This document shows, piece by piece, positions 15,886 to 57,250 of a stretch of DNA of 64,000 nt (positions are counted from its first letter, which is position 1; each line of letters opens with the position of its first letter). A program made the translations under genes and the position numbers. A model generated the notes under the pieces. That model was not told the origin of the DNA, made no database searches, and saw only the letters and a program-made list of their open reading frames with translations. The stretch spans positions 1 to 64,000 of the IMG/VR virus record IMGVR_UViG_3300028558_000791; one strand, given 5' to 3'.

Positions 15886-16704
15886 ATGATCATCGACTGT
15901 CACACTCATATAGGACGCAACGAACACATCAAAGCCACAGTCAAAGAGCTTCTCCAGTCCATGGACGCGGCTAAGATTGATAAAGCGATGGTGTTTGCCG
16001 GTGACCTAAATGATTGTCCCAATAACTATCTATTGTCTGAGGTGAAACCTCATCGTGACAGACTGTTAGCTGTGGCAGCCGCTCATCCTAATAAGTGGAA
16101 GAAGATGTCTGAAATCCAGCAAGATGCTGGTCGTCTTGCTGATCTCTATCAAGCCGCTGACATTGTGGCCGTCAAATTCTATACAGGATATGACCACTAT
16201 TATCCGGGTGATGCTGCTGTTGCAGAGTATCTAATGGATCTAGAAGATGTTGGTTGTCCAGCCATCTTCCATATGGGAGATTGTCTTTGTTCAATCAATC
16301 ACGCCAAACTTAAGTATGCTCAACCATTGGGCATTGATGAGGTGGCCGTAGATTATCCTGACATGAATTTCATCATTGCTCATATGGCATATCCTTGGCA
16401 GCGTGATGCGGCCGAGGTCTGCTATAAGAACAAGAATGTCTTCGCCGATATTTCTGGGTTCGTTTATAAGAACTTTGAGACGGAAGATAAGATCAAATTC
16501 AAAAAAGTATTGGATGAGTTTTTGGATATCTCCAGTAGCGATAAACTTTTGTTTGGAACTGACTGGCCCATCTCAAATCAAAACTCCTACATTGAAGCTC
16601 TGGATTGGGTTGCCACTAACACGACTAACAAGAAGGTTAGTGAGACGTTCACTCCACAGTACATGACCCAGAACACTATCAAAGCATTCAAACTCAATGT
16701 CTAA
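15886..16704 (+). CDS. Amidohydrolase_2 family metal-dependent hydrolase
   Basis: IIDCHTH, IIAHM, LLFGTDWP. Confidence 0.9.
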   Translation: MIIDCHTHIGRNEHIKATVKELLQSMDAAKIDKAMVFAGDLNDCPNNYLLSEVKPHRDRLLAVAAAHPNKWKKMSEIQQDAGRLADLYQAADIVAVKFYTGYDHYYPGDAAVAEYLMDLEDVGCPAIFHMGDCLCSINHAKLKYAQPLGIDEVAVDYPDMNFIIAHMAYPWQRDAAEVCYKNKNVFADISGFVYKNFETEDKIKFKKVLDEFLDISSSDKLLFGTDWPISNQNSYIEALDWVATNTTNKKVSETFTPQYMTQNTIKAFKLNV

Positions 16705-17311
16705 GCCGAAGGTAAGAACGCGCGGTGATATGGCAGCAATGTCTACTGGCCATCGAGAGGCCATGCAAGACCCTGAAGCTAACTACCGTGCCTGGCAACG
16801 TAATGTAACTGATCCTCTAAAGGAGAAGTCCGAAGAGGAGATCCGTCAGATCCTACAGGAAACTGCTAACCCTTTCGCTGTTTGTTTTGAGCATTGGCTC
16901 GGAGATTTCAATATGTCCACTGGTGTTAGAAATGCTAATGGATTCAATGCCAAGGAAATCTATTACATCGGTGACAAGAAGTGGGACCGGCGTGGTGCAG
17001 TTGGAGTCCATAACTATACGGAAGTACAGTGGATTCCGACTGTTGCGGACTTCGCCTTGCTGAGAGAGAAGTATACATTCGTGGGAATTGACAATGTTCC
17101 CGGCTCAGTTCCAATGGCGAATTACGAATGGCCTGAGAATACTATGATGATTTTCGGGGAAGAAGGTCCTGGTTTAACCACAGCGATGCAGGCTTGGTGC
17201 AAAGATATTGTTCATATTGAAATGTTTGGAAGTGTTAGATCATTTAATTGTGGGTCAGCTTCTGCCATTGCAATGTACGATTTCACCTCGAAATATAAGG
17301 CTCGGCAATAA
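16697..17311 (+). CDS. SpoU/TrmH-family RNA 2'-O-methyltransferase
   Basis: N...R motif 1, FGEEGPGL, IEMFGSVRSFNCGSA. Confidence 0.88.
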   Translation: MSKPKVRTRGDMAAMSTGHREAMQDPEANYRAWQRNVTDPLKEKSEEEIRQILQETANPFAVCFEHWLGDFNMSTGVRNANGFNAKEIYYIGDKKWDRRGAVGVHNYTEVQWIPTVADFALLREKYTFVGIDNVPGSVPMANYEWPENTMMIFGEEGPGLTTAMQAWCKDIVHIEMFGSVRSFNCGSASAIAMYDFTSKYKARQ

Positions 17312-17342
17312 TCATGCCAAGAATTTTTAAGAATACTGCCGC

Positions 17343-17371
17343 TTGACGGCTCCCATTCACATGCTCATACT
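17343..17371 (+). promoter_or_regulatory. sigma70-like promoter containing the GGCTCCCATTCA motif
   Basis: TTGACG-N17-CATACT. Confidence 0.6.
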
Positions 17372-17380
17372 GTGGTATGT

Positions 17381-17659
17381 AAGGGAGACGTGCAGGATAG
17401 CGTCCTGCTATTGAGATGGAAACTCAAGAATACTGGAGTCGCTACCAGAAAGCCATCCCTGCTTGGGGGTTTCGTAAGAAACAAAAGCCCGCTGTTTAGG
17501 ACAGCGATGTTTAAGTAAAACCATTACGAAAGTTGAAGAGTAAGAATCTACAATATAAGTAGTGTCCACATAGCAAAAACAAAAACGGACTACCCAGATA
17601 ACAACACAGATGTACAGACTTCGGTCTCATCGCAGAAACGGGTTAAGCCGTATCCTTTT
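17381..17659 (+). ncRNA. Candidate large structured ncRNA (family unassigned)
   Basis: No ORF in the track; ends pair (AAGGGAGACG/CGTATCCTTT); at least 7 hairpins including UUCG and GNRA loops; own promoter. Confidence 0.6.
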
Positions 17660-17686
17660 ATTCGGAATTCAAAATTGAGAAAGAAC

Positions 17687-17995
17687 ATGTCAGAATTAGA
17701 TCAAGACTTCAATAGTCTCGTGGAGCAGATCAATGCCAAGATCAAAGAGTCTGCCGCGGCATTGCAAGAAGCAAATGCTCTTGCTACTAAGGCCGGCCTC
17801 CCCACTTTGTTTTATTCTCAGTTCACTAGAGAGAACATGCAGTATGACAATCGTTATGCTGAGCCACCTCTCTCTAAAGAAGAACTCAATGAGAAGTGCC
17901 GGGAGATTGAAGACAAGCTTAATCTGATTGATGTTGGTCCACTTGAAGCCGCGATGGGTGATGGTGGTTGGTCAACCTCTTCCTCTTACTGCTGA
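17687..17995 (+). CDS. Hypothetical protein (paralog of 6946-7410)
   Basis: Shared C-terminal motif. Confidence 0.6.
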   Translation: MSELDQDFNSLVEQINAKIKESAAALQEANALATKAGLPTLFYSQFTRENMQYDNRYAEPPLSKEELNEKCREIEDKLNLIDVGPLEAAMGDGGWSTSSSYC

Positions 17996-18002
17996 GGCTC
18001 AT

Positions 18003-18431
18003 ATGAAACAAGCTGGAGTAATGCTCATCATCAAGGATGGTCTCATCCTATCTGTATCTCGCCGATATGATAAGACTATCTTCGGTCTGCCTGGTGGTAA
18101 GTTCAATTCTGAACCGCCCGACAATGATAAGGACACAAAAGATACCGCCATCCGTGAGACCCAAGAAGAGACATCGGTAACCGTTCATGAGGCTACTTTC
18201 ATCTACGAACGAGTGGAACTTGGTGGGGGTCCTAATCCTGTCGATTATTATTCTCGATGTTACTATGCAGATTCTTGGGAAGGTATTCCCCAGAACTCGG
18301 AAGAAGGGGAAGTAAAGTGGCTAACGGCCGAAGAACTTACTTCTACTAAAGCAGCGTTCGGAGTTTACAATCGTAAGACTCTTGAAGTATTCAAAACAAT
18401 GTATCCTGATGTTTACATCAAAGGTGAATGA
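18003..18431 (+). CDS. NUDIX hydrolase
   Basis: LPGG...AIRETQEET Nudix box. Confidence 0.88.
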   Translation: MKQAGVMLIIKDGLILSVSRRYDKTIFGLPGGKFNSEPPDNDKDTKDTAIRETQEETSVTVHEATFIYERVELGGGPNPVDYYSRCYYADSWEGIPQNSEEGEVKWLTAEELTSTKAAFGVYNRKTLEVFKTMYPDVYIKGE

Positions 18432-34205: not shown

Positions 34206-35393
34206 ATGAAAGTAGTGTATACTGGCGAGGATATGCCTGAAACGTTTACAAAATCCATCTTTTTAGCTGGACCTACGCCACGCAATAAAGATGAGCAGGA
34301 ATCCTGGCGTCCCGATGCCTTGCAGATTCTAGAAGATAAAGGATTTGATGGAGTTGTTTTCGTCCCTGAAGGACGTGATGGCCAGTTTAAACTAGATTAT
34401 GATGACCAGGTTGGCTGGGAAGAGAAGTATCTCAACGTGGCTGATTGTATCGTCTTCTGGGTTCCTCGTGACCTAGAACCAGATAGCAAAGGTTATCCTA
34501 AGATGGCAGCCTTTACTACTAATGTAGAGTTTGGAACCTGGCAGTCGAGCGGTAAGATTGTATTTGGTGCTCCGCCTGACGCGACTAAGAATGGGTATTT
34601 AAAACATTACGCCGAGAAGTATAGCGTCCCGGTAGCTGAGTCGCTGGTGGAAACGCTAGACGATGCCATGGGAATGGTAGAAGATGGTGCCGAGCGTAGT
34701 GGCGGGGAGCGATATGTTCCACTGTTCATCTGGAAACAGGATTCATTTCAGTCTTGGTATAAATCTCAGACTGATGCCGGTAATCGTTTAGAAGAAGCGC
34801 GTTTGCTTTATAGCTTTCGTCCCCGCTATAAGAGTTTTGTTTTCCTTTGGATTCTACATACTAAAATCTATGTTGAATCAGAAGATAGGGTAAAAGATAA
34901 TGAATTTGTTCTGGCCCGTCCTGATATTTCTTCTGTCTGCCTATACCACAAAGTGTCTGCTGGCTTCCCTGCGTCGTGGAAAGACATCGAAGTAGTTTTG
35001 GTTAGGGAATTTAGGGCTCCAGCCTCTACTAAAAATGGATTCATTCTGGAACTTCCAGGAGGAAGCTCAACTAAGGAAGCTAATCCAGAAGAGGTTGCTG
35101 CCGAAGAGGTGCATGAGGAGATGGGATTTTATATAGAACCATCTCGTTTGAAACTGCATGGCACTCGTCAGCTAGCTGCTACACTTTCCTCACACAAGTC
35201 TCATCTTTTTTCAGCGGAAATTACCGAAGAAGAAGCTGATTGGTTTAAGTCTCAGGAAGATATTGCTCACGGTAAAGAAGAAGATAGCGAAAGAACATTT
35301 ATTGAAGTTCACCCCATCTCTCAGTTAGTAAATGAAGAGTCAATTGACTGGACTACATTAGGACAAATTCTATCTGTAATTTCTAAAGTTTAA
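34206..35393 (+). CDS. Nucleoside 2-deoxyribosyltransferase-like domain fused to NUDIX hydrolase
   Basis: IFLAGPTPR...WE...TNVEFG; ELPGGS...AAEEVHEEMG. Confidence 0.8.
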   Translation: MKVVYTGEDMPETFTKSIFLAGPTPRNKDEQESWRPDALQILEDKGFDGVVFVPEGRDGQFKLDYDDQVGWEEKYLNVADCIVFWVPRDLEPDSKGYPKMAAFTTNVEFGTWQSSGKIVFGAPPDATKNGYLKHYAEKYSVPVAESLVETLDDAMGMVEDGAERSGGERYVPLFIWKQDSFQSWYKSQTDAGNRLEEARLLYSFRPRYKSFVFLWILHTKIYVESEDRVKDNEFVLARPDISSVCLYHKVSAGFPASWKDIEVVLVREFRAPASTKNGFILELPGGSSTKEANPEEVAAEEVHEEMGFYIEPSRLKLHGTRQLAATLSSHKSHLFSAEITEEEADWFKSQEDIAHGKEEDSERTFIEVHPISQLVNEESIDWTTLGQILSVISKV

Positions 35394-35421
35394 GAACCGG
35401 GTAATTTTGTCATATGATATT

Positions 35422-35583
35422 ATGTTCGATGACAAACTATACAAGTTTCTTTTTAAATGCGATGACTGTGCAATGATTGTCTCTATCGAGTTAGAGGAAG
35501 AAGACGAGCTAGAGAAGGTCAATGAGAATAAGTTCGTTCTCGAATGTCCTTGCGGTGGCCAGAGTCACGTACTGCGAGACTAA
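35422..35583 (+). CDS. 53-aa zinc-ribbon protein (not in ORF track)
   Basis: Hand translation: CDDC...CPCG. Confidence 0.55.
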   Translation: MFDDKLYKFLFKCDDCAMIVSIELEEEDELEKVNENKFVLECPCGGQSHVLRD

Positions 35584-35683
35584 TTTCATATACATACCTA
35601 TCAATACTGATATATAAAACGTATCGAAAGAGGGTTTCGATTTTCGGGCTACGTCCGTTTATTTTAGAAAATTATCTACGTCC

Positions 35684-35712
35684 TTGACGGCGAATGTGCA
35701 GAGTTTTACTAT
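35684..35712 (+). promoter_or_regulatory. sigma70-like promoter of Ro60 gene
   Basis: TTGACG-N17-TACTAT. Confidence 0.6.
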
Positions 35713-35787
35713 GCGCAACTCGACGACATCGGCATGTTTCGTTTCAATTTGTTGGGACTATTTCCCAAATATGGAAGGTGTATTATT

Positions 35788-37419
35788 ATGTCAAACAAGA
35801 ACTTATTCTCAAACAAGAACAAGCTAACGGTATCTGTTTCTAAGAAGGTAACTCTGCCAACCAACACGGTTAATGAGGCAGGTGGAACTGCATATAAGCT
35901 GTCCGACAAGGCTGCTTTGGCGCAGTACGCCATGACTGGTACGTTCAACGGTACATACTATGCATCCGATGCAGATCAACTTAAGAAGGTCCTTGAGTTG
36001 GCAAACAAGGTAGATCCAAAGTTCGTCGCTAAGCTGGCAGTGTACGCACGCCAGAGAGGCTTGATGAAGGATATGCCTGCCGTTCTTGCAGCCGTCATTG
36101 CTGGAAGAGACGCTGACCTATTGGCTACGATTTTCGATAGAGTAATCGACAATCCAAAGATGCTTCGTAACTTCGTTCAGATCATCCGATCTGGCGCAAC
36201 TGGCCGTAAGTCCTTGGGAACTCGCCCAAAGAAGTTGGTACAGAAGTATCTTGAGAACTTGACCGACGAGCAGTTGTTCAAGGCTGATGTTGGTAACGAT
36301 CCGTCGTTGCAGGACATCATCAAGTTGGTTCACCCAAAGCCAACTAACAAGCAGCGTTCTGCGTTGTACGGTTACTTGCTCGACAAGGAGTACAACAAGA
36401 GAGACCTCGTGTCTTTGGCACAACAGTTCGAAGCATTCAAGAAGGATATGAAGGGAGAGATCCCAGATGTTCCGTTCCAGATGTTGACGGCTCTGCCATT
36501 GACTGATACGCACTGGAAGCAGATTGCTGAGAATGCAACCTGGAACCAGATCCGTATGAACCTCAATACGTTTGCTCGTCACAACGTATTGGCTGACAAG
36601 AAGCTGGTCGATGTTTTGGCAGCAAAGCTATCGGACCCAGAGCAGGTCAAGCGTTCCAAGACGTTCCCATATCAGTTGTTCACCACTTACTTGAACGTGG
36701 ACGCCACGATTCCAAGCAAGCTGACGAACGCATTGCAAGATGCGGCTGATTCTTCTTTGGATAACATTCCTGAGTTCCCAGGAAAGGTCTTCGTAATGGT
36801 TGACACTTCTGGTTCTATGGGCTCTGCCGTCACCGGTAAGAGAGTAAATCCAAAGACTGGTAAGGAGGAATCCTTTACGACTAAGGCTCGATGCGTAGAC
36901 GTGGCAGCACTTTTCGCAGCAGCAATCTTGCGCAAGAATCCAGACACTGAGATTGTGCCATTCGACACCTCAGTACATGTTGGTCACCGATTCAATCCAC
37001 GTGATTCGATCATGACCAATGCAAAGACTCTAGCTTCATTCGGTGGTGGTGGTACCAACTGCTCCGCTGCTTTGGAGTATGTCAACAAAAAGGCTGGCAA
37101 GGGCGACCTTGTCATCTACGTGTCTGACAATGAGTCATGGGTTGATACGAAGGCATCTAACTCAGGTGTGTTCGGATACTACCGCCGTAATGGCACTGCC
37201 ACTATGGAAGAGTGGAATAAGTTCGCAGCCCGTAACAAGGGTGCAAAGCTTGTCTGTATCGACATTCAACCAAACTCCTCCACCCAAGCACACGACAGGG
37301 ATGACATCCTGAACGTGGGAGGATTCAGTGACCAGGTGTTCGATGTAATCGCAAGATTCGCCGAGCTTGGAAACAACAAGGATCTCTGGATCAAGACGAT
37401 CGAAGACGTCAAACTCTAA
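35788..37419 (+). CDS. rsr: Ro60 / TROVE domain RNA-binding protein (Rsr) with vWA domain
   Basis: NEAGGTAY, TGTFNGTYY, LVHPKP, RMNLNTFARH, MIDAS VDTSGSM, GGGTNCS, VSDNESW. Confidence 0.93.
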   Translation: MSNKNLFSNKNKLTVSVSKKVTLPTNTVNEAGGTAYKLSDKAALAQYAMTGTFNGTYYASDADQLKKVLELANKVDPKFVAKLAVYARQRGLMKDMPAVLAAVIAGRDADLLATIFDRVIDNPKMLRNFVQIIRSGATGRKSLGTRPKKLVQKYLENLTDEQLFKADVGNDPSLQDIIKLVHPKPTNKQRSALYGYLLDKEYNKRDLVSLAQQFEAFKKDMKGEIPDVPFQMLTALPLTDTHWKQIAENATWNQIRMNLNTFARHNVLADKKLVDVLAAKLSDPEQVKRSKTFPYQLFTTYLNVDATIPSKLTNALQDAADSSLDNIPEFPGKVFVMVDTSGSMGSAVTGKRVNPKTGKEESFTTKARCVDVAALFAAAILRKNPDTEIVPFDTSVHVGHRFNPRDSIMTNAKTLASFGGGGTNCSAALEYVNKKAGKGDLVIYVSDNESWVDTKASNSGVFGYYRRNGTATMEEWNKFAARNKGAKLVCIDIQPNSSTQAHDRDDILNVGGFSDQVFDVIARFAELGNNKDLWIKTIEDVKL

Positions 37420-37494: not shown

Positions 37495-37911
37495 ATGAAT
37501 AAGTTAGAAGATTTAGTGGCGGCAGCAAGACTAGCCGCCCAACATTCGTACAGTCCATACAGCAACTTCAAAGTTGCATCCGCCGTAGAAATGGAAGATG
37601 GAAGCATCTTTAGCGGCTCTAATGTAGAGAATGCGTCTTACGGTCTCACTATCTGTGCAGAGCGCAACGCAATCTTTCAAGCTGTGTCTAAGGGACATCG
37701 CCTAATAAAACGTATCATTGTCTACGCTCCTTCACCAACTGTTCGTACTGGCCCTTGTGGAGCCTGTAGGCAGGTAATTAAAGAATTTGCCGATGAATAT
37801 ACACTAATCATTGGCGCCTGTAACTCAGACGATATATTAACTTTTACAATGGAAGATTTGTTACCAAAGAGTTTTGGTCCCGATAATCTTCTAAAGAAAA
37901 GAAACCAATGA
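37495..37911 (+). CDS. cdd: Cytidine deaminase
   Basis: YSPYS, NVENASYGLTICAER, PCGACRQ. Confidence 0.93.
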   Translation: MNKLEDLVAAARLAAQHSYSPYSNFKVASAVEMEDGSIFSGSNVENASYGLTICAERNAIFQAVSKGHRLIKRIIVYAPSPTVRTGPCGACRQVIKEFADEYTLIIGACNSDDILTFTMEDLLPKSFGPDNLLKKRNQ

Positions 37912-38753
37912 TTAAGCGAAATGGCGTAGAGGTAATGAACGCCCGCACTAAAAACGTCTCTATTGCCAAAGAAACAATCGCTATAATCAACAACCAAAAA
38001 TACACCAATCTCAATGGAGATACAGTAGATATCTCAGTAGAAATGGATGCGGCCATAGACGGCACTCATTACTATGAGGCTGACGTTTTAGTCGGCATGC
38101 CCGCCGATCAGGCTCCCATTCACGCTACGATTGAGGTAGTAAATGAGACTACTGCTCAAGCTGCTGTTCGATTGCAAGCTAAAGGAAAAACTAATCTAGT
38201 TGCCCTTAACTTCGCTTCAGCGCGTAATCAAGGTGGAGGCTTTCTTTCTGGAGCTTTGGCTCAAGAAGAAGACTTGTGTAGGGCTTCTGGCCTATATGGT
38301 TGCCTGAAACGCAAACCATTGTTCTACAATGCAAACATCCTGTGTGACGATGCATTCTATACAAATGGAGTTCTCTACTCACCTAACGTTCCGTTCTTTA
38401 GGGATGATCATAATCTGTTTTTAGAGAAGCCTTTTCCGCTTTCTATCGTCTCAGCACCAGCTCCTAACCTTTCTAGCACCAAGTCGAACATCGACCCTAA
38501 AGTATTAACCTCTCTTATTAGAGAGCGTACTGTTAGGATTCTACAGGTGGCTCATGCCAATGGGCATAAGAACATCATTTTAGGTGCCTGGGGCTGTGGA
38601 GCCTTCGGAAATGATCCTGAAATGGTATCAAAAGCATTTATGTTGGCCCTAACTAAAGTTCCATATTTCGAGCATGTAACCTTTGCGGTATATGATACCA
38701 GAGAGCCGTACGTTTTATATGAAACGTTCAAAGAAGTCTGTAACGCTGTATAG
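37908..38753 (+). CDS. TIGR02452/DUF2263 bacterial-type poly(ADP-ribose) glycohydrolase
   Basis: LNFASA..GGGF..GALAQEEDLCRAS, LGAWGCGAFGN. Confidence 0.9.
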   Translation: MIKRNGVEVMNARTKNVSIAKETIAIINNQKYTNLNGDTVDISVEMDAAIDGTHYYEADVLVGMPADQAPIHATIEVVNETTAQAAVRLQAKGKTNLVALNFASARNQGGGFLSGALAQEEDLCRASGLYGCLKRKPLFYNANILCDDAFYTNGVLYSPNVPFFRDDHNLFLEKPFPLSIVSAPAPNLSSTKSNIDPKVLTSLIRERTVRILQVAHANGHKNIILGAWGCGAFGNDPEMVSKAFMLALTKVPYFEHVTFAVYDTREPYVLYETFKEVCNAV

Positions 38754-41430: not shown

Positions 41431-41458
41431 TTGACGAGCTAATTTTTAAGACTACAAT
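41431..41458 (+). promoter_or_regulatory. sigma70-like promoter of the RNA cluster
   Basis: TTGACG-N16-TACAAT. Confidence 0.55.
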
Positions 41459-42727: not shown

Positions 42728-42801
42728 GACTTTGTGGACAAATTATTAAGTCACTCCCGTTAGAGGGAGAGATGTAAGTGCAAGGCTTGCCAAGGTCACC
42801 A
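42728..42801 (+). ncRNA. tRNA-like RNA with 6-nt anticodon loop (GTTAGA)
   Basis: GACTTTG/CAAGGTC plus ACCA; CTCCC/GGGAG; T-loop TGCAAGG. Confidence 0.7.
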
Positions 42802-44572: not shown

Positions 44573-44666
44573 CGATCACGCGTAGCTGGTTGCTCGGGCG
44601 AGACTTATAATCTTGCAAGGACTGATATTCCGTAACGGCAGGGTTCGATTCCCTGGTGATCGACCA
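44573..44666 (+). tRNA. Atypical tRNA-Ile(TAT), 6-bp anticodon stem, long variable region
   Basis: CGATCAC/GTGATCG plus ACCA; GCGAGA-CTTATAA-TCTTGC. Confidence 0.75.
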
Positions 44667-50072: not shown

Positions 50073-50149
50073 GGGTCTTTTGATGTAAAGGCTGGCCTCT
50101 AGACTTTAGTGCTAGAGGACATCGGGTTCGACTCCCGAATGATCCGCCA
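50073..50149 (+). ncRNA. tRNA-like RNA, no D stem, loop CT-TTA-GT
   Basis: GGGTC/GATCC plus GCCA; CCTCTAG/CTAGAGG; TCGGG-TTCGACT-CCCGA. Confidence 0.65.
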
Positions 50150-56566: not shown

Positions 56567-56898
56567 ACATGAGCTTAGCTTGGTCAAAGGATATGGAATT
56601 GGATCCTGGTACGTTTGGAGGTTCTCCGGCATGCCATGTTTTAGTAGATATGATGAATCACAATGTTATTCCTATTATAGAGAAGCATCGTGTTTTATCA
56701 TTCATCAATGATGCTATCTATCAATTCAAGTGGTTATCCACTGTGAAGGAGTATGGCGTCAAGGAGAGGTCTATGGTTCTGATGAGGGACGATATTCTAT
56801 CTAGGGTGGATCATATGCCATATCCTGCCAAGTTTAATTCACATCTGAAGAACGTGATAACTCACCACTTCAGACGATACTTGAAAGAAGAGACCTAG
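56563..56898 (+). CDS. Hypothetical protein
   Basis: Packed ORF. Confidence 0.5.
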   Translation: MNMSLAWSKDMELDPGTFGGSPACHVLVDMMNHNVIPIIEKHRVLSFINDAIYQFKWLSTVKEYGVKERSMVLMRDDILSRVDHMPYPAKFNSHLKNVITHHFRRYLKEET

Positions 56899-57250
56899 AC
56901 AATCGCTCCCGTAAGGAGAGGAAAGTCGGAGCTACGTAGGGCAATTTGCTGGCTAACGGCCAGGCGCAGTGATGCGACAGATAGTGCAACAGAAAAGAAA
57001 CCGCCATGAATCCGCCAGGCCCGAAAGGGAGCAACGGTAGATGGTAAGGGTGAAATGGTGGGGTAAGAGCCCACCGCACCTATAGTGATATAGGTGGCAA
57101 GGTAAACCTCAGATGTAGCAAGCTAAATAGAGAGTGACTTGTCCGGTCAATACTCTCGGGTTAGTGCTGGAGCCATTAGGTAACTAACGGCCAAGATTAA
57201 TGATTGTCTCGATTTATAGACAGGACTCCGCTTATAGGGTGTCTTCTTTC
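56883..57250 (+). ncRNA. rnpB: RNase P RNA, bacterial type A
   Basis: GAGGAAAGTCGGAG, AGTGCAACAGAAA, GGGTGAAA..GGTAAGAG, GGTAAACC, ACAGGACTCCGCTTA; P1 GAAAGAAGA/TCTTCTTTC. Confidence 0.93.

What the first reader, a model, noticed from the sequence alone, without database searches (positions are those of the whole stretch)
17343..17659. Unassigned ~280-nt structured RNA with its own promoter next to the TrmH gene
Seen: an ORF-free gap in otherwise packed DNA, a -35/-10 pair 9 nt upstream, and paired ends. Hairpins include GCAGGA/TCCTGC, TTGAG/CTCAA, CTGG/CCAG, GTTTC-GTAA-GAAAC, CGCTGT/ACAGCG, GTCC/GGAC and AGAC-TTCG-GTCT, joined by A-rich linkers. I cannot assign a family.
Basis: seen in the sequence. 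Interest (0 to 1): 0.7.

Follow-up and report, generated by a model that had tools for sequence, protein, structure and literature searches.

The report
New structured RNA in huge phages
The gap holds a real, previously unclassified ~280-nt folded RNA with its own promoter, conserved in a group of soil "huge" phages; it matters as a new large phage RNA whose job is still unknown.

Summary
Window 17312-17686 is a non-coding gap in a 480,838-bp huge-phage genome. It lies between a SpoU/TrmH-family methyltransferase gene and a small ORF followed by a NUDIX gene.

I found 13 further distinct homologues: 4 IMG/VR huge-phage records and 9 soil or rhizosphere metagenome contigs. All sit in the same gene block, and all that are intact at the 5' end follow a conserved TTGAC-N17-TATAAT-type promoter.

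On a covariance-model alignment, 95% of cells pair and 29 of 54 pairs show compensatory changes (0 of 500 shuffles reach this). The RNA is more conserved at nucleotide level than nearly all flanking genes compared.

A sixth (AGAC-TTCG-GTCT) recurs as a variable hairpin. One (GTCC/GGAC) is refuted.

No Rfam family matches, even at E<=10. It is not the tmRNA, which lies at 170 kb. It does not meet Y RNA criteria, although the phage encodes Ro60.

My best reading is a new family of independently transcribed structured RNA, probably a free-standing RNA rather than a leader. The function is not established.

The parts
17343..17371 (+). Sigma-70-type promoter: -35 TTGACG (17343-48), 17-nt spacer, -10 CATACT (17366-71). 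The start site is inferred at about 17378-17380.
   Evidence: 9/12 match. It is conserved in 12 homologues and closer to consensus there. The same TTGAC-N17-TAnAAT style sits in front of this phage's tRNA clusters.
17379..17663 (+). The structured RNA. The covariance model matches 17379-17672; the conserved core is about 17383-17657.
   Evidence: (329.5 bits).
17392..17408 (+). H1 hairpin GCAGGA-UAGCG-UCCUGC.
   Evidence: 4 of 6 pairs show compensatory changes.
17411..17427 (+). H2 hairpin UUGAG-AUGGAAA-CUCAA: a 5-bp stem with a 7-nt loop.
   Evidence: 2 of 5 pairs are compensatory and 100% of cells are canonical.
17433..17448 (+). H3 hairpin CUGG-AGUCGCUA-CCAG. Its loop (17440-44) pairs with the H1 loop (17398-17402) as a kissing loop.
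   Evidence: L122 has CGGG/CCCG. The loop-loop complementarity occurs in three sequence versions: UAGCG/CGCUA, GGUA/UACC and UGAU/AUCA. Each has a chance probability of 0.004-0.036.
17457..17488 (+). CCC/GGG (17457-59 with 17465-67), or alternatively GCUU/AAGC (17461-64 with 17485-88), enclosing the variable hairpin GUUUC-GUAA-GAAAC (17469-82).
   Evidence: The hairpin is deleted in L002 and L003 and has a different sequence in the other homologues.
17490..17506 (+). Pf hairpin CGCUGU-UUAGG-ACAGCG. Loop/stem-end AGGA (17498-17501) pairs with 3'-tail UCCU (17653-56) as a pseudoknot.
   Evidence: 3 of 6 stem pairs are compensatory. In the pseudoknot, L004 has AAGA/UCUU and L122 has a 6-bp AUAGGA/UCCUAU pairing.
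17522..17564 (+). Pg, a long central hairpin. It has a conserved internal loop GAAA/AUAA and an apical AGA-GUAAGAA-UCU.
   Evidence: This is the best-supported helix: 5 of 7 outer pairs and 3 of 3 inner pairs are compensatory.
17566..17584 (+). A-rich linker (CCACAUAGCAAAAACAAAA).
   Evidence: Read directly from the sequence. It is unpaired in all models.
17585..17651 (+). 3' domain. ACGG/CCGU (17585-88 with 17648-51); ACCC/GGGU (17592-95 with 17640-43); GAUG/CAUC (17609-12 with 17628-31); variable apical hairpin AGAC-UUCG-GUCU (17616-27). The internal loops AGAUAACAACACA and GCAGAAAC are conserved.
17652..17663 (+). 3' tail AUCCUUUUAUUC. It is the pseudoknot partner. There is no conserved intrinsic terminator.
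16697..17311 (+). Upstream neighbour: SpoU/TrmH-family RNA 2'-O-methyltransferase gene.
   Evidence: Pfam PF00588, E = 6.6e-18. It scores far below all NCBIfam equivalog cut-offs.
17687..17995 (+). Downstream neighbour: 102-aa ORF of unknown function (family 'c1') with an invariant C-terminal GWSTSSSYC.
17928..18431 (+). NUDIX hydrolase gene. In every homologous locus that extends far enough downstream it lies 0-2 small ORFs after the RNA.

Best explanation
Window 17379 to about 17660 (+ strand) encodes a member of a previously unclassified family of ~280-nt structured non-coding RNAs. The family is carried by a clade of soil and rhizosphere huge phages.

Shown:
- It has a conserved sigma-70-type promoter directly upstream.
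- It is not protein-coding.
- It folds into about eleven helices: three short 5' hairpins, a variable hairpin, a hairpin whose loop pairs with the 3' tail, a long central hairpin, and a long irregular 3' hairpin domain.
- The loops of the first and third 5' hairpins kiss.

Inferred:
- It works as an RNA in its own right. It would be a stable molecule, free-standing or cut out of the transcript, that scaffolds or decoys a protein partner involved in RNA or translation takeover. It would not be merely a regulatory leader.
- The 57-nt 5' domain (17392-17448) has the order, spacing and size of a tRNA core without an acceptor stem. H1 is 6 bp with a 5-nt loop, then a 2-nt spacer. H2 is 5 bp with a 7-nt loop, then a 5-nt spacer. 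H3 is 4 bp with an 8-nt loop. The first and third loops touch. It may therefore be read by tRNA-binding proteins, such as the adjacent SpoU-type methyltransferase. This last step is speculative.
For: Real and selected:
- There are 13 further distinct homologues, one per genome or contig.
- Nucleotide identity of the RNA to the window copy is 70-92%. Flanking genes score 61-82%, and the RNA is higher in all but one comparison.

Structure:
- 95.0% of cells are canonical against 84.0% in shuffles.
- 29 of 54 pairs are compensatory against 14.2 +/- 2.1 in shuffles.
- The covariation score is 0.366 against 0.158, with 0 of 500 shuffles reaching it.
- Slid controls give 36-44% pairing and 7-8 compensatory pairs.
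- The kissing loop occurs in three sequence versions.

Strand:
- 29 G-U cells against 13 A-C cells.
- The promoter and all neighbouring genes are on the + strand.

Not coding: non-triplet indels and unconserved frames.

Own transcription unit:
- The promoter is conserved.
- L091 has an alpha/beta-hydrolase gene, and L122 a LAGLIDADG endonuclease gene, on the opposite strand between the methyltransferase gene and the RNA.
- Two complete relatives (433 kb and 452 kb) keep the SpoU ... NUDIX-LemA-TPM block without the RNA or its promoter. The RNA therefore behaves as an inserted gene.

Free-standing rather than leader:
- The gene immediately downstream varies: c1, c19, a 61-aa ORF, or NUDIX directly.
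- Loops and linkers, not only a pocket, are nearly invariant.
- The genome is rich in stable RNA genes behind the same promoter style: 57 tRNAs, a tmRNA and RNase P RNA.
- In soil metatranscriptome X16 the contig carrying the RNA has word depth 71, against 14-36 for contigs of the neighbouring genes of the same relative.
- Parts of the RNA are held by at least 20 RNA-seq libraries from soil, peat, wood, wastewater and water.
Against: - No discrete transcript is shown. Metatranscriptome contigs run into the promoter and into both flanking genes, so DNA carry-over or polycistronic RNA is not excluded. Contig depth is a poor measure of expression.
- There is no conserved intrinsic terminator after the RNA. 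The next ORF starts 18-30 nt downstream on the same strand in every locus. Physically the RNA is a 5' leader unless it is processed.
- No protein partner, target or catalytic activity is identified. An antisense search of the phage genome found nothing.
- The tRNA-core analogy rests on dimensions only. There is no acceptor stem and no T-loop or D-loop consensus, and the H2 loop is not conserved as an anticodon (AUGGAAA, AUAUAAA, AAGGAACA).
- The alignment used for the covariation counts was fitted to the model, and only about 10 sequences are independent.
Confidence: 0.55

Rival explanations
1. It is a cis-acting 5' leader for the downstream small ORF and NUDIX operon. It could be a riboswitch-like sensor, a glmS-like ribozyme, or a processive-antitermination or stabilising element. 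The structure would control transcription read-through, translation or stability of the mRNA it heads.
For: - It always lies on the same strand, 18-30 nt upstream of the next start codon, with no conserved terminator.
- A NUDIX gene follows within 0-2 small ORFs in every locus that extends far enough, and directly in L004 and L122.
- The conserved promoter would serve the operon.
- The AGGA/UCCU pairing looks like a Shine-Dalgarno/anti-Shine-Dalgarno pair.
- Metatranscriptome contigs join the RNA to the downstream gene.
Against: - No alternative terminator/antiterminator or start-site-sequestering helices were found. The AGGA lies about 185 nt upstream of the start codon and is not the gene's ribosome-binding site.
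- The first downstream gene differs among members.
- Complete relatives express the same block without the RNA.
- At 280 nt with about eleven helices and near-invariant loops, it is larger and more uniformly conserved than known aptamers.
- No riboswitch or leader family in Rfam matches, even weakly.
Confidence: 0.3
2. It is the Y-RNA-like partner of the phage's own Ro60 (TROVE plus Ro60-vWA) protein. It would tether Ro60 to an effector such as host PNPase.
For: - The window encodes a Ro60 orthologue at 35734-37419. Relatives G001 and G002, which carry the RNA, also have one.
- Bacterial and phage Y RNAs contain tRNA-like modules (PMC4201824).
- A phage Ro60 binds phage-encoded Y-like RNAs and host PNPase (PMC12135203).
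- This RNA has a tRNA-core-sized 5' domain and possible 5'/3'-end pairing.
Against: - Characterised Y RNAs are 80-130 nt and are encoded next to Ro60, usually just upstream (PMC4201824, PMC12135203). This RNA is ~280 nt and lies 18, 17 and 11 kb from the Ro60 gene in the three genomes.
- There is no T-arm consensus and no Y RNA family hit in Rfam.
- The end pairing conflicts with better-supported helices.
- Co-occurrence is uninformative because these phages share most genes.
- A separate conserved 150-nt non-coding stretch with a CGAA motif lies directly upstream of the Ro60 gene and is the more obvious Y RNA candidate.
Confidence: 0.07
3. It is a divergent copy of a known housekeeping or mobile RNA that the models miss: tmRNA, 6S RNA, SRP RNA, RNase P RNA or a group I intron.
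For: Huge phages carry such RNAs, and this genome has a tmRNA and an RNase P RNA. L122 has homing-endonuclease genes next to the RNA.
Against: - No Rfam hit at E<=10 in the window or at E<=5 in four divergent homologues.
- ARAGORN finds no tmRNA here, and a canonical tmRNA lies at 170047-170403.
- RNase P RNA is at 56887-57250.
- No conserved tag reading frame exists.
- The element is intergenic and interrupts no gene. Relatives that lack it show no uninterrupted host gene at the site.
Confidence: 0.02
4. It is a small protein-coding gene (the 48-aa GTG ORF at 17372-17518, or another), or merely a conserved spacer with promoter and regulatory sites and no RNA structure.
For: ORFs of 48 aa (+) and 53 aa (-) exist in the window copy. 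The single-sequence folding z-score is only -2.16.
Against: - A 13-14-nt deletion and other non-triplet indels fall inside these ORFs in homologues. The longest open stretches change frame from member to member.
- 29 of 54 helix pairs show compensatory changes.
Confidence: 0.03

Closest known systems
Large 'ornate' bacterial and phage non-coding RNAs of unknown function (GOLLD, ROOL, also raiA and OLE)
   Same: It is a long, multi-helix RNA with very high sequence conservation in loops and linkers. It is carried by phage genomes that also carry many tRNA genes, has no known function, and was recognised only by comparative analysis. GOLLD and ROOL use loop-loop contacts to build assemblies (bioRxiv 10.1101/2024.12.08.627333).
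   Different: There is no sequence or structure homology: no Rfam match. It is much smaller (~280 nt). It is restricted so far to one clade of soil huge phages. Multimerisation was not tested.
Bacterial and phage Y RNAs (YrlA, Yrn1, phiLo Yrl1/2) with Ro60
   Same: The phage encodes Ro60. The RNA has a module with tRNA-like dimensions and possible terminal pairing.
   Different: It is two to three times longer than Y RNAs. It is not adjacent to the Ro60 gene. It lacks a T-arm consensus, and the loop contact is 4-5 Watson-Crick pairs rather than a T-loop/D-loop contact.
tmRNA
   Same: It is a phage-borne, pseudoknotted RNA of ~300 nt in a translation-oriented gene set, with some 5'/3'-end complementarity.
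   Different: It has no acceptor/T-arm/CCA module and no conserved tag ORF. ARAGORN and Rfam are both negative. The genome has a canonical tmRNA elsewhere, with tag ANDNAFAMAA.
Large cis-acting leaders (T-box, cobalamin riboswitch, glmS ribozyme, HK022 put RNA)
   Same: It sits between a promoter and the first gene of a same-strand gene block. It contains a kissing loop and a pseudoknot, as cobalamin and glmS RNAs do.
   Different: No expression platform was found. The first downstream gene varies. Relatives run the operon without it. No family match was found.

Membership tests
Any Rfam 15 family (4227 models) | Covariance-model score at or near the family's gathering threshold | tested here: not met
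   There is no hit in 17200-17800 even at E<=10 and none at gathering thresholds across the window. There is none at E<=5 in the RNA regions of L122, L004, L099 and L097.
tmRNA | tRNA-like domain: acceptor stem from the 5'/3' ends, a T-arm, and a 3' CCA or discriminator | tested here: not met
   ARAGORN finds none here. The 3' end reads ...GCCGUAUCCUUUUAUUC, with no T-loop. A canonical tmRNA is at genome position 170047-170403.
tmRNA | Conserved tag-peptide reading frame ending in a stop codon | tested here: not met
   Candidate frames are broken by a 13-14-nt indel in L002 and L003 and are not conserved.
Y RNA / YrlA | Length of about 80-130 nt (PMC4201824) | tested here: not met
   The conserved core is about 275-295 nt in all members.
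Y RNA / YrlA | Encoded adjacent to the Ro60/Rsr gene (PMC4201824, PMC12135203) | tested here: not met
   The distance to the TROVE gene is 18 kb in G000, 17 kb in G001 and 11 kb in G002.
Y RNA / YrlA | T-arm-like stem-loop with tRNA T-loop consensus | tested here: not met
   The H3 loop is AGUCGCUA, UUUUACCC or CAUCAUCC. None is a T-loop.
Y RNA / YrlA | Terminal stem from the 5' and 3' ends that binds Ro60 | tested here: inconclusive
   GAGACG/CGUAUC is 85% canonical but overlaps the better-supported ACGG/CCGU and AGGA/UCCU pairings. Binding is not testable with these tools.
Riboswitch or cis-regulatory leader | Location in the 5' untranslated region of the regulated gene | tested here: met
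   The next start codon is 18-30 nt downstream on the same strand in all loci.
Riboswitch or cis-regulatory leader | Expression platform: mutually exclusive terminator/antiterminator or start-site-sequestering helices | tested here: not met
   There is no terminator-like site on the + strand after the RNA. The U-run is absent in L099 and L090. No pairing with the downstream ribosome-binding site was found.
Riboswitch or cis-regulatory leader | Consistent functional class of the downstream gene | tested here: inconclusive
   NUDIX is always within 0-2 ORFs, but the first gene varies. Relatives G003 and G004 keep the operon without the RNA.
GOLLD / ROOL-type ornate phage RNAs | Homology to the family models | tested here: not met
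   No Rfam hit.
GOLLD / ROOL-type ornate phage RNAs | Homo-oligomeric assembly | not testable with these tools
   This needs native gels, mass photometry or cryo-EM.
Group I intron | Interrupts a host gene and has a P3-P7 core | tested here: not met
   The element is intergenic. Relatives without it have small ORFs at the site, not a rejoined gene. There is no Rfam intron hit.
tRNA | Cloverleaf with acceptor stem and conserved D and T loops | tested here: not met
   ARAGORN and the Rfam tRNA model do not call it. Only the dimensions of the three 5' hairpins resemble a tRNA core.

The most novel reading that the evidence does not exclude
This is a new class of phage-encoded functional RNA, either a ribonucleoprotein scaffold or a ribozyme. 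Its 5' domain copies the size and layout of a tRNA body, with loop-loop pairs in place of the tRNA elbow. Huge phages would use it, together with the neighbouring SpoU-type 2'-O-methyltransferase and NUDIX hydrolase, to manipulate host tRNA or translation, or to decoy tRNA-targeting defence nucleases.
Probability: 0.2. Interest if true: 0.85.

Novelty: categorically new. Interest (0 to 1): 0.68.

Why it matters
Huge phages carry large sets of translation-related genes; this one has 57 tRNAs, a tmRNA, RNase P RNA and Ro60. Almost nothing is known about RNAs unique to them.

This is a well-supported new RNA family with an elaborate fold, an own promoter and traces in many environmental RNA libraries. 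It can go straight to structure probing, cryo-EM and partner pull-downs.

If it proves to be a tRNA-body mimic or a new ribonucleoprotein, it would add a new way for phages to take over or protect the translation apparatus. If it proves to be a leader, it would be an unusually large new cis-regulator tied to a NUDIX operon.

Tried and rejected
- Rfam at gathering thresholds and at E<=10 or E<=5 on the window and four homologues gave nothing. ARAGORN gave nothing here.
- BLAST of the gap and of 8 kb around it against 50,697 deposited phage genomes found no match.
- The IMG/VR pattern CGCTG..GACAGCGATGT was too loose: 80 mostly chance loci.
- The genome-contig scan returned only 3 chance matches, so there is no evidence for copies in bacterial genomes.
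- No paralogue exists in the phage's own genome.
- tmRNA idea: a frame GCC AUC CCU ... GUU UAG, ending in the Pf hairpin loop, looked tag-like. It is destroyed by the 13-nt deletion in L002 and L003, and the real tmRNA is elsewhere. No SmpB gene was found.
- Y RNA idea: Ro60 is present but never adjacent to the RNA, and the RNA is too long. No RtcB gene was found.
- An antisense-target search of the phage genome gave only chance-level matches, E>=0.4.
- Rejected or unresolved pairings:
  - The local ACGG-GTTAAG-CCGT hairpin is rejected.
  - RNAalifold's GAAUA/UAUUC helix is weak: 85% canonical and broken in L099, L090 and L122.
  - GCGAUG/CAUCGC and H3-loop/AGCGAU show conservation only.
  - The terminal GAGACG/CGUAUC helix is unresolved.
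- Metatranscriptome contigs show presence but not transcript ends.
- PHROGs, Pfam and NCBIfam gave no function for c1, c19, c4 or c5.
- I did not run complex prediction. It gives no verdict for RNA, and I claim no specific binding.

Full report
**Context.** The window is the first 64 kb of a 480,838-bp IMG/VR virus record, a huge phage. The whole genome carries 57 tRNA genes and a canonical tmRNA. The window holds a class-A RNase P RNA (272.5 bits). The finding lies between a SpoU/TrmH-family methyltransferase gene (16697-17311; PF00588, E = 6.6e-18) and a 102-aa ORF (ATG 17687), which is followed by a NUDIX gene. The methyltransferase scores far below every NCBIfam equivalog cut-off.

**Observation.** The gap 17312-17686 has no conserved ORF. 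The promoter TTGACG-N17-CATACT at 17343-17371 is picked up by the consensus scan. The window copy alone folds only modestly better than shuffles (z = -2.16). I therefore looked for relatives.

**Relatives.**
- The methyltransferase protein led to three IMG/VR huge-phage contigs of 267-354 kb. All three hold a homologue of the gap sequence.
- A conserved-block pattern found ten more copies in soil, rhizosphere and other JGI metagenome contigs. One of these (L101) is identical to the window.
- A profile of the methyltransferase found three further huge phages. One of them, L122, carries a much more divergent copy (124.8 bits).
- Deposited phage genomes and 185,579 prokaryote species genomes gave nothing.
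- Each genome has a single copy.
- Gene order around the RNA is conserved and all on one strand: amidohydrolase, SpoU, (0-2 small or inserted ORFs), RNA, (0-2 small ORFs), NUDIX, c4, LemA, TPM.

**Not coding, but selected.**
- L002 and L003 lack 13-14 nt inside the only sizeable ORF. Other indels are not multiples of three, and the longest open stretch changes frame from member to member.
- The RNA is nevertheless more conserved at nucleotide level than nearly every flanking gene compared. Examples are 86% against 64-82% for L002, 92% against 61-82% for L096, and 84% against 67-73% for L088.

**Structure.**
- RNAalifold, my own helix search and two covariance models agree on the secondary structure.
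- On the 12-sequence model alignment, 95.0% of cells are standard pairs against 84.0 +/- 0.8% in shuffles. Compensatory changes occur in 29 of 54 pairs against 14.2 +/- 2.1. The covariation score is 0.366 against 0.158. None of 500 shuffles reaches any of these values. Partners slid by 1-3 columns give 36-44% pairing and 7-8 compensatory pairs. The 13-sequence version gives the same picture. The caveat is that the alignment is fitted to the model and only about ten lineages are independent.
- Supported helices, in window coordinates:
  - H1: 17392-97 with 17403-08.
  - H2: 17411-15 with 17423-27.
  - H3: 17433-36 with 17445-48. It was invariant until L122 showed CGGG/CCCG.
  - A variable hairpin at 17469-82, which is missing in L002 and L003.
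  - Pf: 17490-95 with 17501-06.
  - The long central hairpin Pg (17522-27 with 17559-64, plus inner stems), whose outer stem has a different sequence in almost every lineage.
  - Ph: 17585-88 with 17648-51.
  - Pi: 17592-95 with 17640-43.
  - Pj: 17609-12 with 17628-31.
  - A variable apical hairpin at 17616-27.
- Two tertiary pairings emerge.
  - The H1 loop is complementary to the H3 loop in three different sequence versions: UAGCG/CGCUA in most members, GGUA/UACC in L004 and UGAU/AUCA in L122. The chance probabilities are 0.004, 0.033 and 0.036.
  - The Pf loop AGGA pairs with the 3' tail UCCU. L004 has AAGA/UCUU and L122 has a 6-bp AUAGGA/UCCUAU pairing.
The local 3' hairpin ACGG/CCGT is broken in five members.
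- A terminal helix GAGACG/CGUAUC is possible (85% canonical). It overlaps Ph and the pseudoknot, so I leave it unresolved.
- G-U cells outnumber A-C cells 29 to 13. With the promoter, this puts the RNA on the + strand.

**Own promoter.**
- The -35 and -10 hexamers and the GGUAUGUAA-like start region are conserved, out to L122.
- In L091 an alpha/beta-hydrolase gene lies on the opposite strand between the methyltransferase gene and the RNA. In L122 a LAGLIDADG endonuclease gene does the same. Read-through from upstream cannot supply the RNA in those phages.
- The same promoter style precedes this phage's tRNA clusters at 41431, 49378, 122927 and 169036.
- Two complete relatives (433 kb and 452 kb) keep the SpoU ... 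NUDIX-LemA-TPM block but have no copy of the RNA anywhere. Small ORFs fill the site. The RNA with its promoter therefore behaves as an accessory gene gained by one sub-clade.

**Expression.**
- Parts of the RNA occur in at least 20 RNA-seq libraries from soil, rhizosphere, peat, decaying wood, wastewater, wetland, sludge and water.
- In soil metatranscriptome X16 a relative's whole gene block is present. The contig carrying the RNA has word depth 71, against 14-36 for the other contigs of the block.
- Some contigs include the promoter or run into both flanking genes. DNA carry-over or polycistronic RNA cannot be excluded, and no transcript ends are defined.

**Identity.**
- No Rfam family matches, even at E<=10 in the window or E<=5 in four divergent homologues.
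- It is not the tmRNA. ARAGORN is negative, there is no conserved tag frame, and a canonical tmRNA lies at 170 kb.
- The phage does encode a Ro60 orthologue (35734-37419; TROVE plus Ro60-vWA). The RNA still fails the published Y RNA criteria of 80-130 nt length, adjacency to the Ro60 gene and a T-arm (PMC4201824, PMC12135203). It is ~280 nt and lies 11-18 kb away in three genomes.
- It is not an intron, because it interrupts nothing.
- The nearest known kind is the group of large ornate bacterial and phage RNAs of unknown function (GOLLD, ROOL; bioRxiv 10.1101/2024.12.08.627333). There is no homology to them.

**Mechanism.**
- Shown: it is a conserved, non-coding, intricately folded element behind its own promoter.
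- Inferred: it acts as an RNA in its own right (confidence about 0.55). The reasons are these:
  - Its size and uniformly conserved loops and linkers.
  - The variable first downstream gene.
  - Its dispensability for the operon in relatives.
  - The company of other stable RNA genes behind similar promoters.
  - The higher metatranscriptome depth.
- The 57-nt 5' domain has the order, spacing and size of a tRNA core. It has a 6-bp hairpin, a 2-nt spacer, a 5-bp hairpin with a 7-nt loop, a 5-nt spacer and a 4-bp hairpin, with the first and third loops touching. This suggests, but does not show, recognition by tRNA-binding proteins.
- The main rival (about 0.3) is a cis-acting leader of the NUDIX operon. 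There is no conserved terminator, and the next start codon is 18-30 nt away in every locus. However, I found no expression platform.

**Verdict.** This is a new structured RNA family of unknown function in soil huge phages.

Noticed in passing
window 56887-57250 (+): A full-length bacterial class-A RNase P RNA (272.5 bits, E = 7.6e-88) is encoded in this phage genome. That is unusual for a virus.
   Followed up: no
window 9194-63883; genome 72855-477394: The window has 29 tRNA genes and the genome has 57. A canonical tmRNA lies at genome 170047-170403 (tag ANDNAFAMAA), and no SmpB gene was found.
   Followed up: partly
window 50073-50149; genome 172924-172997 and 173183-173255: There are suppressor-like tRNAs: one with anticodon UUA (reads UAA) and two with CUA (read UAG). 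This may hint at stop-codon reassignment or read-through. I did not test the genetic code.
   Followed up: no
window 35734-37419 (+): A Ro60 orthologue is present (TROVE plus Ro60-vWA domains). Relatives G001 and G002 also have one.
   Followed up: partly
window 35584-35733 (+): A conserved ~150-nt non-coding stretch lies directly upstream of the Ro60 gene. It reads ...UAUCGAAAGAGGGUUUCGAUUUUCGGGCUACGUCCGUUUAUUUU, with a CGAA motif and a U-run, and is a possible small Y-like RNA. It is conserved in G001, but that is a close relative, so structure is untested. A small Cys-rich ORF precedes it (about 35414-35583).
   Followed up: partly
window 17687-17995 (+) and homologues (alignment A7): The small ORF right after the RNA has a variable helical/acidic body and an invariant extreme C-terminus, GWSTSSSYC. 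It looks like a leader plus core peptide or a modification site. No Pfam, PHROGs or NCBIfam match was found.
   Followed up: partly
window 34206-35393, 37495-37911, 37908-38753: A cluster of nucleotide and ADP-ribose genes lies here: a nucleoside 2-deoxyribosyltransferase-NUDIX fusion, a dCMP/cytidine deaminase and a microbial PARG.
   Followed up: no
L122:4109-5359 (-) and L122:5841-5900 (+): A LAGLIDADG homing-endonuclease gene is inserted between the SpoU gene and the RNA. The ORF after the RNA starts with MWYLYKITNTVNNKLYVGIT, a GIY-YIG-like motif, fused upstream of the NUDIX homology.
   Followed up: partly
L119 and L120 (records of 432,844 and 451,956 bp): These complete related huge phages keep the SpoU ... 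NUDIX-LemA-TPM block but lack the RNA and its promoter. Unrelated small ORFs of 85, 67 and 115 aa occupy the site.
   Followed up: yes
window 42728-42801 and 44573-44666: ARAGORN calls an odd tRNA with a 2-nt anticodon and a 94-nt tRNA-Ile(UAU), which may carry an intron or a long arm.
   Followed up: no
window 17489-17507 (- strand): Read on the minus strand, the Pf hairpin plus the A-rich linker looks like an intrinsic terminator (TCGCTGTCCTAAACAGCGG followed by GCTTTTGTTT). It is probably incidental, since G-U pairs and the promoter put the RNA on the + strand.
   Followed up: partly
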